Counted from the first letter of the stretch, positions 32,580 to 53,533 are shown. The stretch: DNA of 64,000 nucleotides from Pelomyxa schiedti (GCA_020536535.1 JAHLWZ010000590.1:42147-106146), one strand, 5' to 3'. Numbers and translations: made by a program. Notes: generated by a model not told the origin, from the letters alone.

Positions 32580-32680
32580 NNNNNNNNNNNNNNNNNNNNN
32601 NNNNNNNNNNNNNNNNNNNNNNNNNNNNNNNNNNNNNNNNNNNNNNNNNNNNNNNNNNNNNNNNNNNNNNNNNNNNNNNT
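32580..32680. other. Assembly gap (101 N)
   Basis: Run of n characters. Confidence 1.
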
Positions 32681-32697
32681 ATCCATATCTTATAATT

Positions 32698-35460
32698 TTA
32701 CACTTCAGTGTTGCCCGCCAAGCACCTCCCGCTCCCTCTGGTTGTTATCTCAGTTAAACAGGTCTAAAATAAACAGAAATACATGTCCACTTTTTTTTTT
32801 CCTTAAGTTAACCTTTACATAGTTTTCTCCCAGCCCATTGGGAAAATGTGACAAGTTACCCCGGTTGCTTGTGGGTGTAGAGATAACAGTCGACTGATTG
32901 TTGTTCCGAGTGCATTTTCCACCTGAGGCGACTCCAGAGGCGGCAGTTCTGAAAATGTCAAGGCGGGTGTGTTGCTGCTCGAAATCGGATCTGACCACGG
33001 TATCTCGTCCATTGCACCTCACCTCGGCACCCGGCTTCAGATTCTCAAATTGCTTTTTATTTTTGTTTATGTTGTCCCTGTCTGGCTGAGGAAGCATCAG
33101 AATCGCAGACGACACGGCGAGCCCTTGGGGTAGCTGTGAGAACACACCCCAGAAGAGTGTCCTGCCCAACACATCTTTTCGGGTGAACGGCCTCAGGCTC
33201 AGTGAAGTGGTGGTGGTGAGCAGATTGGGCAGGGTGTGGTCCAGATAGATTGAGACCTTGCTGGGTTGGAGTCGGCGTAGTGACAGGCTGTTCACAGCCA
33301 ACAGCTGTGATCCAGTCTCAGTATGCTTAGTTTTTTTTTTTTTGGGTTGTTGAAAATAAATGACTGGGACAGTGGTCGTAGTGTAGAGAACTTACAGTTA
33401 CGGAAAGGAACCACTCTACCAAATCATAGTATTGGTCACAAGAGAGATAGAAAAGGAGTTCAGTGTGTTCCACTGTTTGATTCTGTTCTGTTTTTATTAT
33501 TATTATTATTTTTTGGTTTGATTCTATTTTTGATTTACAAAACATACCTCCACTTCCATACATTGCTAAACTGATCTGAGAACCTTCAATTGCGTTGGTT
33601 TTTATGTCAAAAATGTTTGCAGATTTCAATGAGTTCAACCACCACTCCGGAATAAACTTTTCCAGTTCACTCTGAGGAAGTACCTGGTCAGTGGGTGTAC
33701 AAAGTACCATAAGACTGTGCCACAATTTGGAGATGCTGCTTGCAGTAATGGAGCGAATATTTTGTGTTGCTTCTTGACATAGTGAGTGCTTGACAACCTG
33801 GGATGGTAGGAGAGAATCTCGAGTTTCAGAGTTCATTTCATATACTGTGCACCGCTGTTGATATAACATCATCCAGTCAGTTGTGTGCTGATAAAGAAAG
33901 TGCAGACACTCCCAGCGATATGTATACAAGTGATACCATGTCAGATTGTGAGTGAGTGGAGCTCTCCAGCTCCTACAAACCTGCTTGCATGACAACAGGT
34001 CTCTGAATTTCAAAAATGAAGAAATGGTAAAATTTATCTAGTTGTGGAGGGAATGCATTTAGTGGAGGGAAAATACAGGAAGGTACCTCAATAGGGAGGT
34101 GCATGAAAAGTATCAGTTCCTCCTCCAAAGGAAAGGAGGCGGTGGTGAGAGGTACACCATTCACAGTGAATCTTGGGGTGCTGTTATCAACCGTTGAAGG
34201 AGGTGCTAGTAGAATTGCATCGGAAACCAATTTACTGGAAGCCAAAATTACAGCAACAAGGAACCAAGGAGGAAATTCCTTGTTTGTGCATATCTATGGA
34301 GTGTCAGAGGGAAAGAACTCGAGGGAAAACCGGGCACTCTTTTCACTGCCTCCACAAAAGATATTCTGGATTGAATACTAAATCGTTTGATTATCTCAAG
34401 TGCGATTTCCTTCTGTTGGTTCACAAACAGGGAAAAAAAATTTTGTTGATCCAGTACACCTCGTGATAGACTACGTATAACTTCACTCACTTGATTGTTT
34501 GAGGATTCCCCCAAGTGAAAGGGGCTGACTTCATGAAAACAGCCAAGGAGTTTGCTCTCTAAAGCAGAGAAGTCAGAGTCGGAGATGAGCTGATTGGTGC
34601 TTATCCAGTGTCTCTGCGTTGGTGCATACCCATAAATCAGTTTATTCACACAGGACAGAGGATTAAATTCCCAAGAATACTCATGAAGCACTTGAAATAG
34701 AAAAGAATGCAGAGGCTTACAGCTTTCCAAGCACTGTTTCAAAGCATGAAACTGTAGCATATGTTTGTTCCAGTTAACATTATAAACCAAGTGACTAAAT
34801 TTTATCTGACACAGTGCAATCAAACTCGCCACACTAAAACGGGTACCCTAAACTTGTCAGCACAGGTAAGTACGAACGTAACATTTGTTACCACATCAAT
34901 TCCAATTATACAAATCGTTGGAAAATAAATCACGTACATCAGGTAAGTAGCAACCCCCAAATCCCACAGGCTCAGGCGTTGTCTCCAGCGCAGCCGTCAA
35001 TGAAGTGCTCACCAGAATTTCCACGTCGTGTTTGCCGTCCAGCCTGCACGACAGCAGCAAAATCGCACCCTCCTCCATCTTCAAGGCGGCGCTCCTCGGC
35101 ACCCCCTCAGACACGTGCACCTGGTCCAGGCGTCCCCCGCATTTTTCCAGCCACTGGGCGGCTGCTTCTCGGGTCGCCACTAGGTCCCAGTCGGTGTGTT
35201 CGTCCACGGGGCGGAACGGACTCGGGGGAGTCGCACCGGTGGTGGTGGTCGTGGCGGTGGCGGCGGAGGTCCCCTGACACCTGAAGTAGCCCCACCGCGC
35301 GAGATAGTCCACGGCGCGCGAGCCGATCAACACCAGGCCCAGTGAGCCCCACGCTGCGCAGGGGCGAGCATGTTGTTTCTCCCGCAGATCTCTGGCGGCC
35401 TGTATGGCCTGCGCCACACTGCACTCGCGGTATGTGCCAACACAACGTATCGCCTGACAT
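32698..35460 (-). CDS. Nucleotidyltransferase-like N-terminal domain + F-box protein; multi-exon, ends approximate
   Basis: LVLIGSRA...DWDLV (GS + DxD), then IKFSHLVYNVNWNKHM, AVKR|ICT...PPWF, and the F-box-like MHLPIE..LKFRDLLSCKQVCRSW. Confidence 0.6.
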
Positions 35461-39624: not shown

Positions 39625-40460
39625 CGATGTGGGCGTTTATTAATTGGACAAAAAAGGTTTAATGGTAAAATGGGCCATGGGGCCAGGGTTGCAGCTGGTA
39701 CTGGTCTGGATGGATGGAGTGTTGGTTATAGAGGGTGTGGGTGTTACTGGTGGCAAAAGTGGGTGGGTGATTGAGAAAAGGTGTGTTTACTGGTGGCATG
39801 GAGGGTGGGATTGTAAGTGAATTTGGGAGGTATGGTGGCTGGTTCATCTGGTCTGTTTGGGCATTCTAATCCTAATGCCACCCGAAACTCTCGTTCTGCC
39901 AAGTGTGGCGGTAAGTTAGAAGTATGGTGCAGATAGAGTTGATTGAGTTGCACAGCAGACTTTTTGATGGTATTTGGTGATGCCGGCAGAACATTAAGGG
40001 CCTTTAGAGGATTCAACTTAATTTCTGCTCTGAGGTTTTTAAGGTGGCTACATGAGTATAGGATGTGCTTGACACTTTCAGGTGAGTCACAGCCATGCCT
40101 GCACATGGGGGACACCTTTGAAAAGTGGGCTCTTTTGTTGTTCAGACATCGGATGTTAAGGGCAGTGCACATTGCACTGTTTCTCACAGATGGATTCAAG
40201 CCTGGCACATTCAGATTTTGCACCATGGTGTACCAGTGACTTGATGAGAAATGTTCATGCATGTCTTTAGTTTCGTGTGGAGGGGTTTTTGAGATCGTCT
40301 TTTCATGAGTTCTTTGAAATCTCAGATGGACTGGTTCCCTCAAAGTCCAGTCTGATACAGCAGCAATAAAGCTTAGTGGAGTAGATCTGGGGATTGAGCA
40401 GGGATTTTTCCTGTTGGGGTGTCGGAACGCTGCCACTGCTATGGCTCTATTCCATTGGTA
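39625..40460 (-). mobile_element. 5'-truncated non-LTR retrotransposon remnant (C-terminal zinc-binding region)
   Basis: The ORF contains CRHGCDSPESVKHILYSC, the C..C...E(S/T)..H....C motif typical of LINE ORF2 C-termini. AATAAA lies downstream on the - strand. No RT core is visible. Confidence 0.6.
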
Positions 40461-40507
40461 CATATAAGCCCGCGAACGCCCAATCAGGCTACCGTGACAG
40501 CATATAT

Positions 40508-41050
40508 AGTACAACAGAGGCTATTGTTACATTTGCAGCAAAAACACCCTTCCTTCTTCTTCTTCTTCTGGTAGATAATACAGGCGGGGGAATTGCCTCG
40601 TGCTCAGCACCACCCTCACTCAGTGAGGGGGAAGAGGTTCCCCCCAAGCCGCCTCTCTATTGCACAGAGAGGATAGTGCTAAGTGCCTGCTATCAGAGTC
40701 AATTCAATTAATTATTAACCACGCTACTTACTTTGTTGACATTAACAGAACATATAGGGTGCATCTGGATCAGCAAGGAGCATTTGGAGCAGTGCTTGGG
40801 AGTACATTTGAGAGCGGGTGGTGTGCATTTTTGGGAGCATTTTGCGGAGCGGAGCGGAGCGGAGCGGCGCATTTGGGAGCTGGGGGAGTTTGGGTGGGTC
40901 TGGCAGCATCAGTCATTTTGGGGATAGCCAGCAGCAAAGCAAGCAAGCAAGCAAGCAGCATTTTGGGGCATACAGAGTACAACAGAGGCTATTGTTACAT
41001 TTGCAGCAAAAACACCCTTCTTCTTCTTCTGGTAGATAATACAGGCGGGG
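40508..41050 (+). repeat. Pair of ~80-nt direct repeats (40508-40590 and 40976-41050)
   Basis: agtacaacagaggctattgttacatttgcagcaaaaacaccctt(ctt)nctggtagataatacaggcggggg occurs twice, differing only in the (ctt)n tract. Confidence 0.9.
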
Positions 41051-41249
41051 GGGTGGTTACCTTCATCCCGTAGTGGCCGTAGTTGCTGGAGAAAAAAAAC
41101 GGTTTTTGGTTCCTGAAAAATGAAAAACCAAGTAGGAACCCTTCGGCTCCCACAATTCATAAAGAGGAAAAATGTTGGAGGAAAAAGCCAGTCAGTCAAG
41201 ATTTCCCTGACGAGGGAAGCTCCCATGGTTCGCAAAACAACCAAACAGG

Positions 41250-41380
41250 GCTCCTAGTTCTAGACAGCCAATCTGGAGGTCAGGGTTCGAATCCCTGCCT
41301 GGGGACAGACCGACGGCGGAAACTTCACTGTCACACAACAGCAACCCCAGGTGGTGTAATGGTAGCACTCTTCTAGGAGC
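41250..41380 (+). tRNA. Candidate circularly permuted tRNA, anticodon GCC (Gly): 3' part 41260-41305 precedes 5' part 41345-41371
   Basis: 3' part: CTAGA-CAGCCAA-TCTGG, AGGT, CAGGG-TTCGAAT-CCCTG, CCTGGGG-A. 5' part: CCCCAGG-TG-GTGT-AATGGTA-GCAC-T. The acceptor stem pairs 7/7. The flanks GCTCCTAG and CTAGGAGC are complementary. A33 is non-canonical. Confidence 0.7.
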
Positions 41381-42137
41381 ACTTGGCTGCGCTTTCCCCC
41401 AACCTTCCCTCCTGCACGTCATTTTTTTTTTCCTCTCTCCAGAGAACCGGTTCTTAGAAATCAGCACCGCAATAACAACGAAACGAAAGAGCACAATAAC
41501 TGCCACATCAACTAGTACAGCCAATAACGCGAAGGACGGGAGTGGGTGGTTGCATCACTGAAGCAACTCTAAGACCATCATTGGAGGGCACAAGCCACGC
41601 ACCTAGGGCGAGTGCAGGGCGAGTGCTTGATGGGTTCTCAGCTCAACAGTCAATAATTATTGGACAAAACAACCTAGTATATCTAAAGAAAAGAAGCCAC
41701 AGTAAGCCGCGAATCCAAAAACATTTAGACGCACGGCAATAAGGGGATTTCATTTATGGTGTAGCTTGAAGATAAATGCAAACCTTTACTGCCACCGAAT
41801 GACTTGCCACGTTCCTTTTTTTTGTTAATGACATTTGTTTGTGAGGTTCCTTGACAACTTGTAGTGTTCATCAATTTCATCAGTGTAACTCTTGTGCGTT
41901 TCTCAGTGGATTTCTTGTGATTTGTCGAGTTCCAATAAATCCTTGTTCGTTCTCAGAACCTCGTTGTGGAAAAAGAACAGAAAGGCCCGAGGAAGGTTCA
42001 AGGAACTTTCAGAAATACGCGTCATCTGTACTCCAAAAGGCCTTTTTAAGTGTCCTCGGCGTTTTGCACAACTTTGTGAAAAAACACTTCTGTCTAGGAA
42101 CGCAACAAAAATAAAAGCAAACAGAACATTCTATTCC

Positions 42138-43807
42138 ATGGCAACACAGATGTATGGAGACGTCGCAGCCATTACAGGAGAGGCACGCTTTGAGTGCGCA
42201 GACGCTGTGACCGTGCGCATTGCTGCTGGTGAAGGACGCTGGTTGAACGTGGGTGTTCCAACTCTCCTTCTTTCGTTTTTGTTCTGTCAGTGCCGTGCTG
42301 TTGATTGATGTTTGTTGTTTTGTGTGCACACCCCACCCTTTGCCTTTTTTTTTCCCTTGTGTGTTGTAGTCTCTTCTGGAATTTAATCGTTGTCAACAAT
42401 AACAGATTATCAGTGCCACTTACGGAGGGGCAAATCCAAATAGGGATGTAACTGAAGCCATACGTAACCTCGTCGTCGACGAATCTTGGATCCATGTGGA
42501 AGGCGGAATTCACACCCGCATTGGAGACCCTGAACCAGGAGTTCCAAAGAGATTGGTCATTAATTACAAGTTCCTGCCCATTGAAAGTGAGATGAAAGTC
42601 TTCAGGTGCCACGACGGTGAGACTGTAGACATTACTCCACCAGAAAACTATATCCTCCATGTACAAAGTTTCCAAAGAAACTCTCTTGAACTAACATGAA
42701 CACCTCAGATTCTCCATGCTACATATGGCGGGGGGTTTCCAAAGCGCCAAGTCACATCCAAAGTAGCTGCTCTGGTCACTGGTACTGGCATCCACGTCAC
42801 TGGCGGCATACATACACGCATTGGAGACCCTGAGCCAGGCGTTCCCAAGACTCTGGTAATTTTCTACAAGTTCGTGGTATCAAGGAAGAAGTTCTTGTTC
42901 TTCGGATGCGCAGATGCCGAGCCTGTTTGCATTGTTGCTCCATCTGGATATACACTCAATGTTAGCTGTTCCCTCCGTTTTTGTTTTTCCAATGTGCGAT
43001 TCACTCACTCTGTCACAGGTCGTTGAGTCCACTTATGGAGGTGATGAACCAAATCGTGACGTTACGGCCTCAGTCCGAGCTTTGGTACACAATAGCACCG
43101 AGATTCGCGCCGAGCACGGGGGCATTCACCTTCTAATTGGAGACCCCGAGTTCGGCGTTCCCAAGACCTTCAACGTCACTTATAAATTCCTTCCTGATGG
43201 ACGCTCCCACGAGGAAATGGAATTCCACTGCGTCGACGGCGAACCAGTGCACATCCACGCGCCTCAAGGGAAGGGCCTCCAGGTACATTCATTCCTCGTT
43301 CTTCGTTTGGTGTCTCCAACAAACAACATGTACAGATCACCAACGCCACATATGGCGGAAACAATCCATCCCACGACGTCACTGACCTGGTATACGCCAT
43401 CGTCCAGCACAACGACTCCATTGATGTTGATGGTGGAATTCACACCCAAATTGGTGACCCAGAGCCCGGCGTTCCTAAGAAGTTCGTACTCCATTACAAG
43501 TTTGTAGCACTGCCGCTAGAAGCAGCATTCACTTGCGGTGACTTTGAACCTGTTCACATTGCTGCCCCGCATGGCTATTCCCTTCAGGTTCACTTCCTTT
43601 GTTTCCTTTCCCTACGGTGACCCAAATCAGATTGCACGGGCAACCTATGGTGGGCACAATCCCCAGCGTGATGTCACTGATAAAGTGTCTGCACTGGTTT
43701 CTTCGGGGGCAATCAATGTTGATGGTGGAATTCATACCCAAATTGGGGACCCTGAGCCAGGAGTAGGCAAGAGGCTCGAAATTCTTTACGCATTCGTTCA
43801 CTTATGA
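42138..43807 (+). CDS. Five tandem SUEL/rhamnose-binding-lectin-like domains, no signal peptide; six exons
   Basis: Repeated unit FxCxDxxxVxIxAPxGxxL|IxxATYGG...DVT..V..LV...GGIHT.IGDPEPGVPK.L...Y. Five phase-0 introns at 42249-42405, 42661-42708, 42961-43018, 43283-43335 and 43588-43630. Confidence 0.8.

Positions 43808-52317: not shown

Positions 52318-53533
<1,216 letters not shown>

What the first reader, a model, noticed from the sequence alone, without database searches (positions are those of the whole stretch)
41231..41431. Candidate circularly permuted tRNA gene (3' half upstream of 5' half) in an amoebozoan-type genome
Seen: a complete anticodon arm, 4-nt variable loop, T-arm and 3' acceptor strand (41260-41305) come first. 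After a 39-nt spacer comes a 5' acceptor strand plus D-arm (41345-41369). CCCCAGG pairs 7/7 with CCTGGGG-A73. No alternative 5' half exists upstream and no T-arm follows downstream. Leader and trailer are complementary (GCTCCTAG 41250-57 with CTAGGAGC 41373-80), extended after a 3-nt ACA bulge by CCAA/TTGG, which resembles a bulge-helix motif. A T-run terminator candidate lies at 41422-41431. Known: permuted tRNA genes are described in Cyanidioschyzon merolae, some prasinophytes, a chlorarachniophyte nucleomorph and the archaeon Thermofilum, and mature through a circular intermediate. I know of none in Amoebozoa. Inference: the junction would fall at 26/27-28/29 (both halves carry CT), an atypical site. 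Caveats: A33 instead of U33, C1:G72 is unusual for Gly, and no strict BHB sits at the junction, so this could be a pseudo-tRNA or a tRNA-derived element.
Basis: partly seen in the sequence, partly recalled or inferred. Interest (0 to 1): 0.9.

Follow-up and report, generated by a model that had tools for sequence, protein, structure and literature searches.

The report
Permuted tRNA-Gly gene in an amoeba
In what looks like a Pelomyxa-type amoeba genome, a glycine tRNA gene is encoded back to front (3' part before 5' part), an arrangement so far reported only in a few algae and one archaeon; whether the cell turns it into a working tRNA is untested.

Summary
The 3' part of a tRNA (positions 27-73) lies at 41260-41305. 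A 39-nt spacer follows, then the 5' part (positions 1-26) at 41345-41369.

- **Cloverleaf:** Rfam's tRNA model aligns the pieces to positions 26-71 (24.7 bits) and 1-25 (9.5 bits). They abut without gap or overlap. Rejoined, ARAGORN calls a 71-nt tRNA-Gly(GCC); 0 of 300 shuffles are called.
- **Flanks:** leader and trailer form a 12-bp helix with pairing probability about 1.0. A T10 run follows, and there is no TTTT inside the unit.
- **Context:** the locus is intergenic and single-copy by contig depth. The contig carries an actin 97% identical to Pelomyxa actin.
- **New here:** the trailer holds an exact antisense copy of the anticodon loop, and the spacer resembles the upstream flank.
- **Against a working tRNA:** A33, C1:G72, no bulge-helix-bulge (BHB) motif that would give the right product, and no RNA reads at the locus.
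- **Earlier notes:** the scan's first-stage readers noted at least ten other permuted tRNA candidates on other DNA of this genome. One lies 70.8 kb upstream with the same A33, C1:G72 and antisense trailer. I could not fetch any of them.

Verdict: a real permuted tRNA-derived gene, whose maturation is plausible but unproven.

The parts
41206..41244 (+). Upstream flank that resembles the spacer. Possibly a duplicated tRNA 5' flank left by a tandem duplication.
   Evidence: Local alignment with 41310-41344: 26 of 39 columns identical, shuffle p about 0.03. Direct repeat D7.
41242..41257 (+). Leader strand of the leader/trailer helix.
   Evidence: Pairs with 41373-41389. The 8 core pairs have probability 0.96-1.00. 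Also present in the MFE folds.
41258..41259 (+). TT linker between the helix and the anticodon stem. The 3'-side cut would fall here or up to 2 nt further on.
   Evidence: Read from the sequence. Inference.
41260..41305 (+). 3' part of the tRNA, positions 27-73: anticodon arm, variable loop AGGT, T arm, acceptor 3' strand and A73. No CCA is encoded.
   Evidence: Rfam RF00005 model 26-71, 24.7 bits, E 0.00088 in truncated mode. ARAGORN cloverleaf.
41265..41271 (+). Anticodon loop CAGCCAA. The anticodon GCC is at 41267-69. Position 33 (41266) is A, not U.
   Evidence: Changing A33 to U for scoring only raises the ARAGORN ceiling from 114% to 124%.
41306..41344 (+). 39-nt intervening sequence joining the acceptor 3' end to the acceptor 5' end. 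RNase P and RNase Z would have to remove it.
   Evidence: It holds no T4 run. Acceptor pairing probability is 0.88-0.90.
41345..41369 (+). 5' part of the tRNA, positions 1-26: acceptor 5' strand CCCCAGG, U8 G9, D arm GTGT/AATGGTA/GCAC, U26.
   Evidence: Rfam RF00005 model 1-25, 9.5 bits in truncated mode. 7 of 7 pairs with 41298-41304.
41370..41372 (+). CTT linker. Its CT duplicates positions 27-28, so the junction can be read as 26/27, 27/28 or 28/29.
41373..41389 (+). Trailer strand of the leader/trailer helix. Its CTAGG (41373-77) could also pair with the anticodon stem 3' strand TCTGG (41272-76).
   Evidence: I12. The alternative conformer is 4-5 kcal/mol less stable.
41383..41389 (+). TTGGCTG, the exact reverse complement of the anticodon loop CAGCCAA.
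   Evidence: Read from the sequence. The 7-mer occurs 5 times on the + strand of 64 kb. The lead came from scan note s1-378053.
41422..41431 (+). T10 run, a candidate RNA polymerase III terminator.
   Evidence: 12 runs of T10 or longer on this strand in 64 kb, and no TTTT within 41241-41421. It is also one arm of an inverted repeat with 41086-41099.

Best explanation
This is a single-copy, intergenic, circularly permuted gene derived from a tRNA-Gly(GCC), in the nuclear genome of an archamoeba, most likely Pelomyxa schiedti or a close relative.

Proposed pathway (inferred, not shown):
1. One polymerase III transcript runs from upstream of 41242 to the T10 run at 41422.
2. A 12-bp leader/trailer helix brings the end of the 5' part (position 26 to 28) next to the start of the 3' part (position 27 to 29).
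3. Both single-stranded linkers (UU and CUU) are cut and the ends ligated, giving a circle.
4. RNase P and RNase Z remove the 39-nt spacer.
5. CCA is added, giving a 71-nt tRNA.

The gene probably arose from a tandem pair of tRNA genes.

Shown: the arrangement, the completeness of the cloverleaf, the helix, the T run, and the single-copy intergenic setting.
For: - **Exact halves.** The two pieces align to Rfam tRNA model positions 26-71 and 1-25, with no gap and no overlap. The scores sum to 34.2 bits before any acceptor pair is counted, against a gathering score of 29.
- **Cloverleaf call.** ARAGORN calls the rejoined sequence tRNA-Gly(GCC) and of 300 shuffles.
- **Conserved positions present (drawing).** U8, A14, A15:U48, G18 G19, G53:C61, U54 U55 C56, A58, a 4-nt variable loop, A73, C35 C36 and C2:G71. 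No CCA is encoded.
- **Predicted fold.** In the ensemble the leader/trailer helix has probability 0.96-1.00, the acceptor stem 0.88-0.90, the D stem 0.85-0.88 and the T stem up to 0.96.
- **Helix beyond chance.** An 8-bp Watson-Crick flank match occurs in 0.76% of random flank pairs.
- **Transcription unit.** T10 lies 52 nt after the 5' part and there is no T4 inside the unit.
- **Read-level support.** A 528-nt contig of run X1 spans 40976-41503 with 0 differences, at depth 23.4 against 23.6 for the flank. A repeat 600 nt upstream sits at about 340-395.
- **Setting.** The locus lies between annotated genes at 39744-40463(-) and 42138-43807(+).
- **Origin.** The spacer resembles the upstream flank, as expected after a tandem duplication.
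- **Unchecked leads.** First-stage notes list at least ten more permuted tRNA candidates in this genome, several with junctions at 28/29 or 29/30 and no BHB.
Against: - A33 replaces the nearly invariant U33, and C1:G72 is atypical for tRNA-Gly.
- No BHB motif that would yield the 71-nt product has more than 1 bp on the exon side or 2 bp on the intron side. The one BHB-like fold that can be drawn has a 6-nt bulge (by hand, from the sequence) and is about 9 kcal/mol less stable than the main fold.
- The B box lies upstream of the A box, so the usual internal promoter cannot drive the whole unit. I found no clear TATA-like element within 50 bp upstream.
- The two single-cell RNA runs have zero depth at 41110-42300. 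They cover the neighbouring genes no better, so this says little.
- No related sequence was found in the metagenome collection, so there is no comparative support.
- The fold z-score is only -0.64.
Confidence: 0.5

Rival explanations
1. A decaying relic. A tandem pair of tRNA-Gly genes lost the outer half of each copy, and the remnant is a transcriptionally silent or useless pseudogene.
For: - A33 and C1:G72.
- No usable BHB.
- The spacer resembles the upstream flank, which points to a tandem duplication.
- No RNA depth at the locus.
- The relative Mastigamoeba balamuthi is reported to have 219 tRNA genes scattered in its genome; the gene-finding method is not stated in the passage read, and ordinary architecture is my assumption (PMC8136499).
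Against: - Two independent losses would have to end at exactly the same tRNA position. Yet the halves are exact complements, model 1-25 and 26-71.
- All tertiary-interaction positions except 33 are intact.
- A 12-bp leader/trailer helix directly abuts both ends, and a T10 run follows.
- Neither trailer nor leader shows significant relic similarity to the missing halves (p 0.67 and 0.35).
- Similar loci are noted repeatedly in the genome, though those notes are unchecked.
Confidence: 0.25
2. A tRNA-like non-coding RNA that is never rejoined. It would work as transcribed, with paired ends and a capped acceptor stem, like the tRNA-like module of bacterial YrlA Y RNAs. Or it would work as a two-piece tRNA held together by the acceptor and leader/trailer helices after RNase P and RNase Z cuts.
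For: - The very stable terminal helix.
- The lack of a BHB.
- A33, which argues against ordinary decoding.
- The trailer is antisense to the anticodon loop, so it could mask or regulate that loop.
Against: - A complete anticodon arm with a sense anticodon and Gly identity elements (C35, C36, A73, C2:G71) is not needed for such a role.
- The scan's notes describe permuted candidates for many different anticodons. That fits a decoding set better than a single regulatory RNA.
- No such RNA class is known in eukaryotes (my own knowledge).
Confidence: 0.15
3. An artefact: an assembly error or a chimera from single-cell whole-genome amplification, or a collapsed tandem array.
For: The genome comes from amplified single cells. 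Run X1 is probably the same data as the assembly, so it is not independent support.
Against: - A different assembler (Logan) gives one unbranched 528-nt contig across the whole locus with 0 differences, at the depth of its flanks.
- A collapsed array would show raised depth and a branch at position 26/27.
- Random chimeras would not leave exact complementary halves, a flanking helix and a T run.
Confidence: 0.03

Closest known systems
Circularly permuted tRNA genes of Cyanidioschyzon merolae (Soma et al. 2007; review PMC3978253)
   Same: - The 3' half lies upstream of the 5' half on one strand.
- The intervening sequence is short: 39 nt here, 7-74 nt there.
- A T stretch follows the 5' half, and there is no terminator in the spacer.
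- CCA is not encoded.
- Leader and trailer pair with each other.
- Junctions occur at varied positions in C. merolae too (20/21, 37/38, 50/51, 59/60).
   Different: - The junction here is at 26/27 to 28/29, at the base of the anticodon stem. That site is not in the review's table.
- There is no BHB motif at the junction.
- U33 is not conserved.
- The host is a heterotrophic amoebozoan, not an alga.
- No circular intermediate has been shown.
Type II (37/38) permuted tRNA genes of Ostreococcus, Micromonas and the Bigelowiella natans nucleomorph (Maruyama et al. 2010, as cited in PMC3978253)
   Same: Permuted order and short spacers of 5-64 nt.
   Different: Their junctions sit at the canonical intron site in the anticodon loop (one O. 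tauri gene, Ser(CGA), at 15/16) and carry BHB-like motifs. Here the anticodon arm is intact within the 3' half.
Permuted tRNA-iMet and tRNA-Tyr of the archaeon Thermofilum pendens (Chan et al. 2011, PMC3218864)
   Same: Permuted order.
   Different: They are archaeal, the junction is at 59/60, the spacers are 1-7 nt, and processing is by archaeal EndA at a BHB.
Anticodon-intron pairing in intron-containing eukaryotic pre-tRNAs (my own knowledge)
   Same: A removable segment carries a sequence complementary to the anticodon loop. Here that is TTGGCTG at 41383-89.
   Different: The complementary segment lies in a 3' trailer more than 100 nt away, not in a 37/38 intron. In the predicted ensemble it loses to the leader/trailer helix.
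tRNA-like module of bacterial YrlA Y RNAs (bioRxiv 10.1101/312249, seen only in the list; not read)
   Same: A tRNA-like fold whose RNA ends lie on the anticodon side, with the acceptor stem closed by a loop.
   Different: It is bacterial, and it has no separate complete anticodon arm or sense anticodon. This resemblance is recalled, not tested.

Membership tests
Circularly permuted tRNA gene (as defined in PMC3978253) | The 3' half is encoded upstream of the 5' half on the same strand, separated by a short intervening sequence that links the acceptor ends. | tested here: met
   41260-41305, then 39 nt, then 41345-41369. The acceptor strands pair 7 of 7.
Circularly permuted tRNA gene (as defined in PMC3978253) | The rejoined halves give a complete cloverleaf with the eukaryotic consensus elements (U8, R15:Y48, G18G19, U33, U54U55C56). 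| tested here: inconclusive
   All are present except U33, which is A. The Rfam halves score 24.7 and 9.5 bits and abut exactly. ARAGORN calls tRNA-Gly(GCC).
Circularly permuted tRNA gene (as defined in PMC3978253) | The sequences next to the junction form a BHB motif, strict or relaxed, for the splicing endonuclease. | tested here: not met
   I enumerated all bulge and helix layouts that would give the 71-nt product. None has more than 1 bp of exon-side helix or 2 bp of intron-side helix. The only BHB-like fold needs a 6-nt bulge (by hand, from the sequence) and scores -44.0 against -52.8 kcal/mol.
Circularly permuted tRNA gene (as defined in PMC3978253) | A T stretch downstream of the 5' half and no termination signal in the intervening sequence. 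| tested here: met
   T10 at 41422-31, and no TTTT in 41241-41421.
Circularly permuted tRNA gene (as defined in PMC3978253) | A TATA-like element within about 50 bp upstream of the 3' half. | tested here: inconclusive
   None is obvious in 41210-41259. CATAAAG lies about 90 nt upstream of the leader helix. Promoter rules for this lineage are unknown.
Circularly permuted tRNA gene (as defined in PMC3978253) | Expression through a circular RNA intermediate to a mature tRNA. | not testable with these tools
   The only RNA runs are single-cell RNA-seq runs kept as contigs. Their depth is 0 at the locus and at its neighbours.
tRNA-Gly(GCC), eukaryotic cytoplasmic | Anticodon GCC, C35 C36, A73, C2:G71, a 4-nt variable loop, and G1:C72 with G3:C70 (my own knowledge of GlyRS identity elements). 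| tested here: inconclusive
   The anticodon, A73, C2:G71 and the variable loop AGGT are present. Positions 1:72 and 3:70 are C:G instead of G:C.
tRNA-derived SINE or multicopy repeat | Many dispersed copies, hence raised read depth. | tested here: not met
   Depth is 23.4 across the locus against 23.6 in the flank. A true repeat 600 nt upstream reaches 340-395.

The most novel reading that the evidence does not exclude
The Pelomyxa lineage has re-organised a substantial part of its nuclear tRNA gene set into permuted genes. First-stage notes name Gly, Asp, Phe, initiator Met, Ser, Asn and Gln candidates. Their junctions would lie at the base of the anticodon stem, and they would be matured by a pathway that does not use the BHB motif. 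Instead it would be guided by a long leader/trailer helix and perhaps by a trailer segment antisense to the anticodon loop. That would be an independent, non-algal origin of permuted tRNAs with a new processing rule, and it would include tRNAs that tolerate a non-U33.
Probability: 0.3. Interest if true: 0.9.

Novelty: new variant of a known kind. Interest (0 to 1): 0.74.

Why it matters
Permuted tRNA genes are known from only six algal species and one archaeon: 34 genes in the 2014 review (PMC3978253). A 2026 review of photosynthetic organisms (PMC13578239) names only those same algal and archaeal cases. They have been used to argue for an algal or ancient origin tied to BHB-dependent splicing.

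A set of such genes in a heterotrophic, anaerobic amoebozoan would change that picture. Its relative Mastigamoeba is reported to have 219 tRNA genes scattered in its genome (PMC8136499), so the arrangement would have arisen independently and recently. It would also point to an unknown cut-and-join activity for pre-tRNAs. In practice, standard tRNA finders would undercount the tRNA genes of such genomes: ARAGORN and Rfam found nothing in this window.

Tried and rejected
**Searches that found nothing**
- ARAGORN and Rfam on the native order find nothing.
- My script scan of the window for further permuted candidates found only this one credible locus.
- ARAGORN found no tRNA in the two fetched loci, which add 7.3 kb of new contig.
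- Two exact-pattern scans of the metagenome collection for the permuted Gly unit gave 0 hits.
- Searching the scan's notes by sequence gave nothing.
- Accession strings are not in the paper library.

**RNA evidence.** The only runs are small single-cell libraries kept as contigs. RNA depth is zero at the locus.

**Reaching the second permuted locus, 70.8 kb upstream on the same contig (record position about 12.5 kb)**
- I tried exact-protein look-ups.
- I got as far as record position 34829. All genes beyond that are multi-exon with short exons, so they cannot be addressed by reference.
- I did not paste spliced proteins, and I gave up.

**Alternative readings of the junction, rejected by hand from the sequence.** A 37/38 or 31/32 junction using the trailer's CTTCT or CTAGG as positions 27-31 would leave a 1-nt variable loop or 4 nt between the D and anticodon stems.

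**Relic similarity.** The trailer against the 3' half and the leader against the 5' half are not significant (p 0.67 and 0.35).

Full report
**What is in the sequence**

On the + strand:
- an anticodon arm CTAGA/CAGCCAA/TCTGG (41260-76);
- a 4-nt variable loop AGGT;
- a T arm CAGGG/TTCGAAT/CCCTG (41281-97);
- the acceptor 3' strand CCTGGGG and A73 (41298-41305);
- 39 nt of spacer;
- CCCCAGG TG GTGT AATGGTA GCAC T (41345-69), which is the acceptor 5' strand, U8 G9, the D arm and U26.

In the native order, ARAGORN finds no tRNA in the 64-kb window. Rfam finds nothing at gathering thresholds, and nothing tRNA-like at E up to 10.

**Scoring the halves**

I could not give a rejoined sequence to Infernal. 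Instead I used cmscan's truncated mode and ended the searched stretch at the proposed break.
- The 3' piece aligns to RF00005 positions 26-71 at 24.7 bits.
- The 5' piece aligns to positions 1-25 at 9.5 bits.
- Together they cover all 71 model positions, with no gap and no overlap.
- The sum is 34.2 bits, above the gathering score of 29, before any of the seven acceptor pairs is counted.
- The boundaries were set by me, so the exact abutment is partly by construction. Even so, no D-arm sequence precedes 41260 and no anticodon or T arm follows 41369.

Rejoined in a script, ARAGORN calls a 71-nt tRNA-Gly(GCC). The call survives up to 114% of the default thresholds, and 124% if position 33 is set to U for scoring only. 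None of 300 shuffles is called.

The cloverleaf has these conserved elements:
- U8, A14, A15:U48, G18 G19
- G53:C61, U54 U55 C56, A58
- A73, C35 C36, C2:G71
- no encoded CCA

The exceptions are A33 and C:G at 1:72 and 3:70.

**The flanks**

- GCTCCTAG (41250-57) is the exact complement of CTAGGAGC (41373-80).
- In the Boltzmann ensemble of 41236-41421 these pairs have probability 0.96-1.00.
- The helix extends to 12 bp: CAGG 41246-49 with CTTG 41382-85, A41381 bulged, plus two more pairs.
- The acceptor, D and T stems have probabilities of 0.85-0.96.
- The canonical anticodon stem has probability 0.29, and the fold that includes it is within 0.7 kcal/mol of the MFE.
- An 8-bp Watson-Crick match between 30-nt flanks occurs in 0.76% of random placements in this window.
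- A T10 run lies at 41422-31, and there is no TTTT within 41241-41421. T10-or-longer runs occur 12 times on this strand in 64 kb.

1. *Anti-anticodon segment.* The trailer carries TTGGCTG (41383-89), the exact reverse complement of the anticodon loop CAGCCAA (41265-71). The trailer's CTAGG can also pair with the anticodon stem's 3' strand. That alternative fold is 4-5 kcal/mol less stable than the main one. I looked for this because a scan note on another locus mentions it.
2. *Spacer similarity.* The spacer resembles the stretch just upstream of the leader, 41206-44: 26 of 39 columns identical, shuffle p about 0.03 (see also repeat D7). This is what a tandem duplication of a tRNA gene with its 5' flank would leave. 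Tandem duplication is the usual model for the origin of permuted genes (PMC3978253).

**BHB test**

I enumerated bulge-helix-bulge layouts between the strand running from the 5' half into the trailer and the strand running from the leader into the 3' half.
- Among layouts whose cuts would give the 71-nt product, none has more than 1 bp of exon-side helix or 2 bp of intron-side helix.
- Because CTAG occurs three times (leader, start of the 3' half, trailer), one BHB-like fold can be drawn by hand: CUU bulge, CUAG/CUAG helix, CUAGUU bulge, GAGC/GCUC helix.
- That fold has a 6-nt bulge, would need cuts at the bulge edges, and scores -44.0 against -52.8 kcal/mol.
- So the defining processing motif of the known permuted genes is not met.

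**Is the arrangement real, and is it single-copy?**

- Five public runs hold the region.
- In run X1, one 528-nt contig covers 40976-41503 with no differences, at depth 23.4. The next long contig has depth 23.6.
- A repeat at 40561-40743 has depth 340-395.
- There is no branch at position 26/27, as a hidden conventional copy or collapsed array would cause.
- X1 is probably the sample the assembly was made from, so this excludes an assembler artefact, not an amplification artefact.
- The two RNA runs have zero depth from 41110 to 42300. That includes the neighbouring gene's start, so they say nothing on expression.

**Which organism**

- An actin ORF at 52318-53487(-) is 97% identical to Pelomyxa palustris actin, against about 90-92% for most of the other listed hits (up to 94% for one unnamed metagenome protein).
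- The window is positions 42147-106146 of JAHLWZ010000590.1 in GCA_020536535.1.
- The runs are single-cell DNA and RNA libraries of one study. This fits the single-cell Pelomyxa schiedti genome project (PMC8887013, PMC10579272).
- The species assignment is an inference.
- The locus lies between annotated genes at 39744-40463(-) and 42138-43807(+).

**Literature**

- The 2014 review lists 34 permuted genes, in C. merolae, four prasinophytes, the B. natans nucleomorph and T. pendens. Their junctions are at 15/16, 20/21, 37/38, 50/51 and 59/60.
- A 2026 review of photosynthetic organisms names only the same algal and archaeal cases.
- No paper in the library links permuted tRNAs with Amoebozoa.
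- The P. schiedti genome paper does not mention tRNA at all.
- Mastigamoeba balamuthi is reported to have 219 scattered tRNA genes, and Entamoeba has arrays.

**Earlier notes of this scan (unchecked leads)**

- At least ten other permuted tRNA candidates are noted in the same genome: Gly(GCC), Ser, initiator Met, Asp, Asn, Phe, one with anticodon TTG, and others.
- Several have junctions at 28/29 or 29/30 'with no canonical BHB'. One has G33.
- One lies 29.5 kb before this window's start, which is 70.8 kb upstream on the same contig. It is noted to have A33, C1-G72 and a trailer antisense to the anticodon loop.
- If these hold, the odd features of my locus are family traits rather than decay.
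- I tried to fetch the upstream locus and failed.

**Verdict**

The permuted arrangement is real and cannot be chance. The most likely reading (about 0.5) is a functional permuted tRNA-type gene, matured by cutting and joining at the base of the anticodon stem and then by RNase P and RNase Z. The rivals are:
- a relic of a tandem pair (0.25);
- a tRNA-like RNA that is never rejoined (0.15);
- an artefact (0.03).

It works like the algal permuted genes, but it fails their BHB criterion. I therefore file it as a new variant of a known kind.

Noticed in passing
window 40500-40590 and 40968-41051: A direct repeat of about 85 nt, 96-100% identical (GCATA..AGTACAACAGAGGCTATTGTTACATTTGCAG...GGTAGATAATACAGGCGGGGG). 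It brackets a 380-nt segment.
   Followed up: partly
window 40561-40743: A short element with DNA contig depth of about 340-395, against 23 for the surroundings, so about 16 copies. It is also present in the RNA-run contigs at depth 36-80, and RNA and DNA contigs join 41051 to 40595. It has hairpin-forming inverted repeats. Rfam finds no family. It could be a small multicopy expressed RNA gene or a mobile element.
   Followed up: partly
window 41086-41099 and 41422-41442: Inverted repeat CTGGAGA+A8 / T10+CCTCTCTCCAG (79-92% complementary) brackets the whole 357-nt unit that holds the permuted tRNA. So the T10 'terminator' is also one arm of a possible terminal inverted repeat.
   Followed up: no
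window 41504-41755: Run X1 holds two contig versions here, at depths 17.5/16.3 and 7.2/5.6. They differ by 12 substitutions and several indels in about 250 nt. The 528 nt that include the tRNA unit show no variant.
   Followed up: no
window 40758-40968: A satellite-like block of GGAGCATTTGG, GGAGC and AAGC repeats between the two copies of the direct repeat.
   Followed up: no
window 32580-32679: A run of 100 N, which is an assembly gap.
   Followed up: no
window 52318-53487 (-): An actin gene whose main exon is 97% identical to Pelomyxa palustris actin. I used it to place the organism.
   Followed up: yes
L002 (record 34829-55956 of the same contig): All genes annotated upstream of the window start are multi-exon with short exons. 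ARAGORN finds no conventional tRNA in the roughly 71 kb of the contig that I could read.
   Followed up: partly
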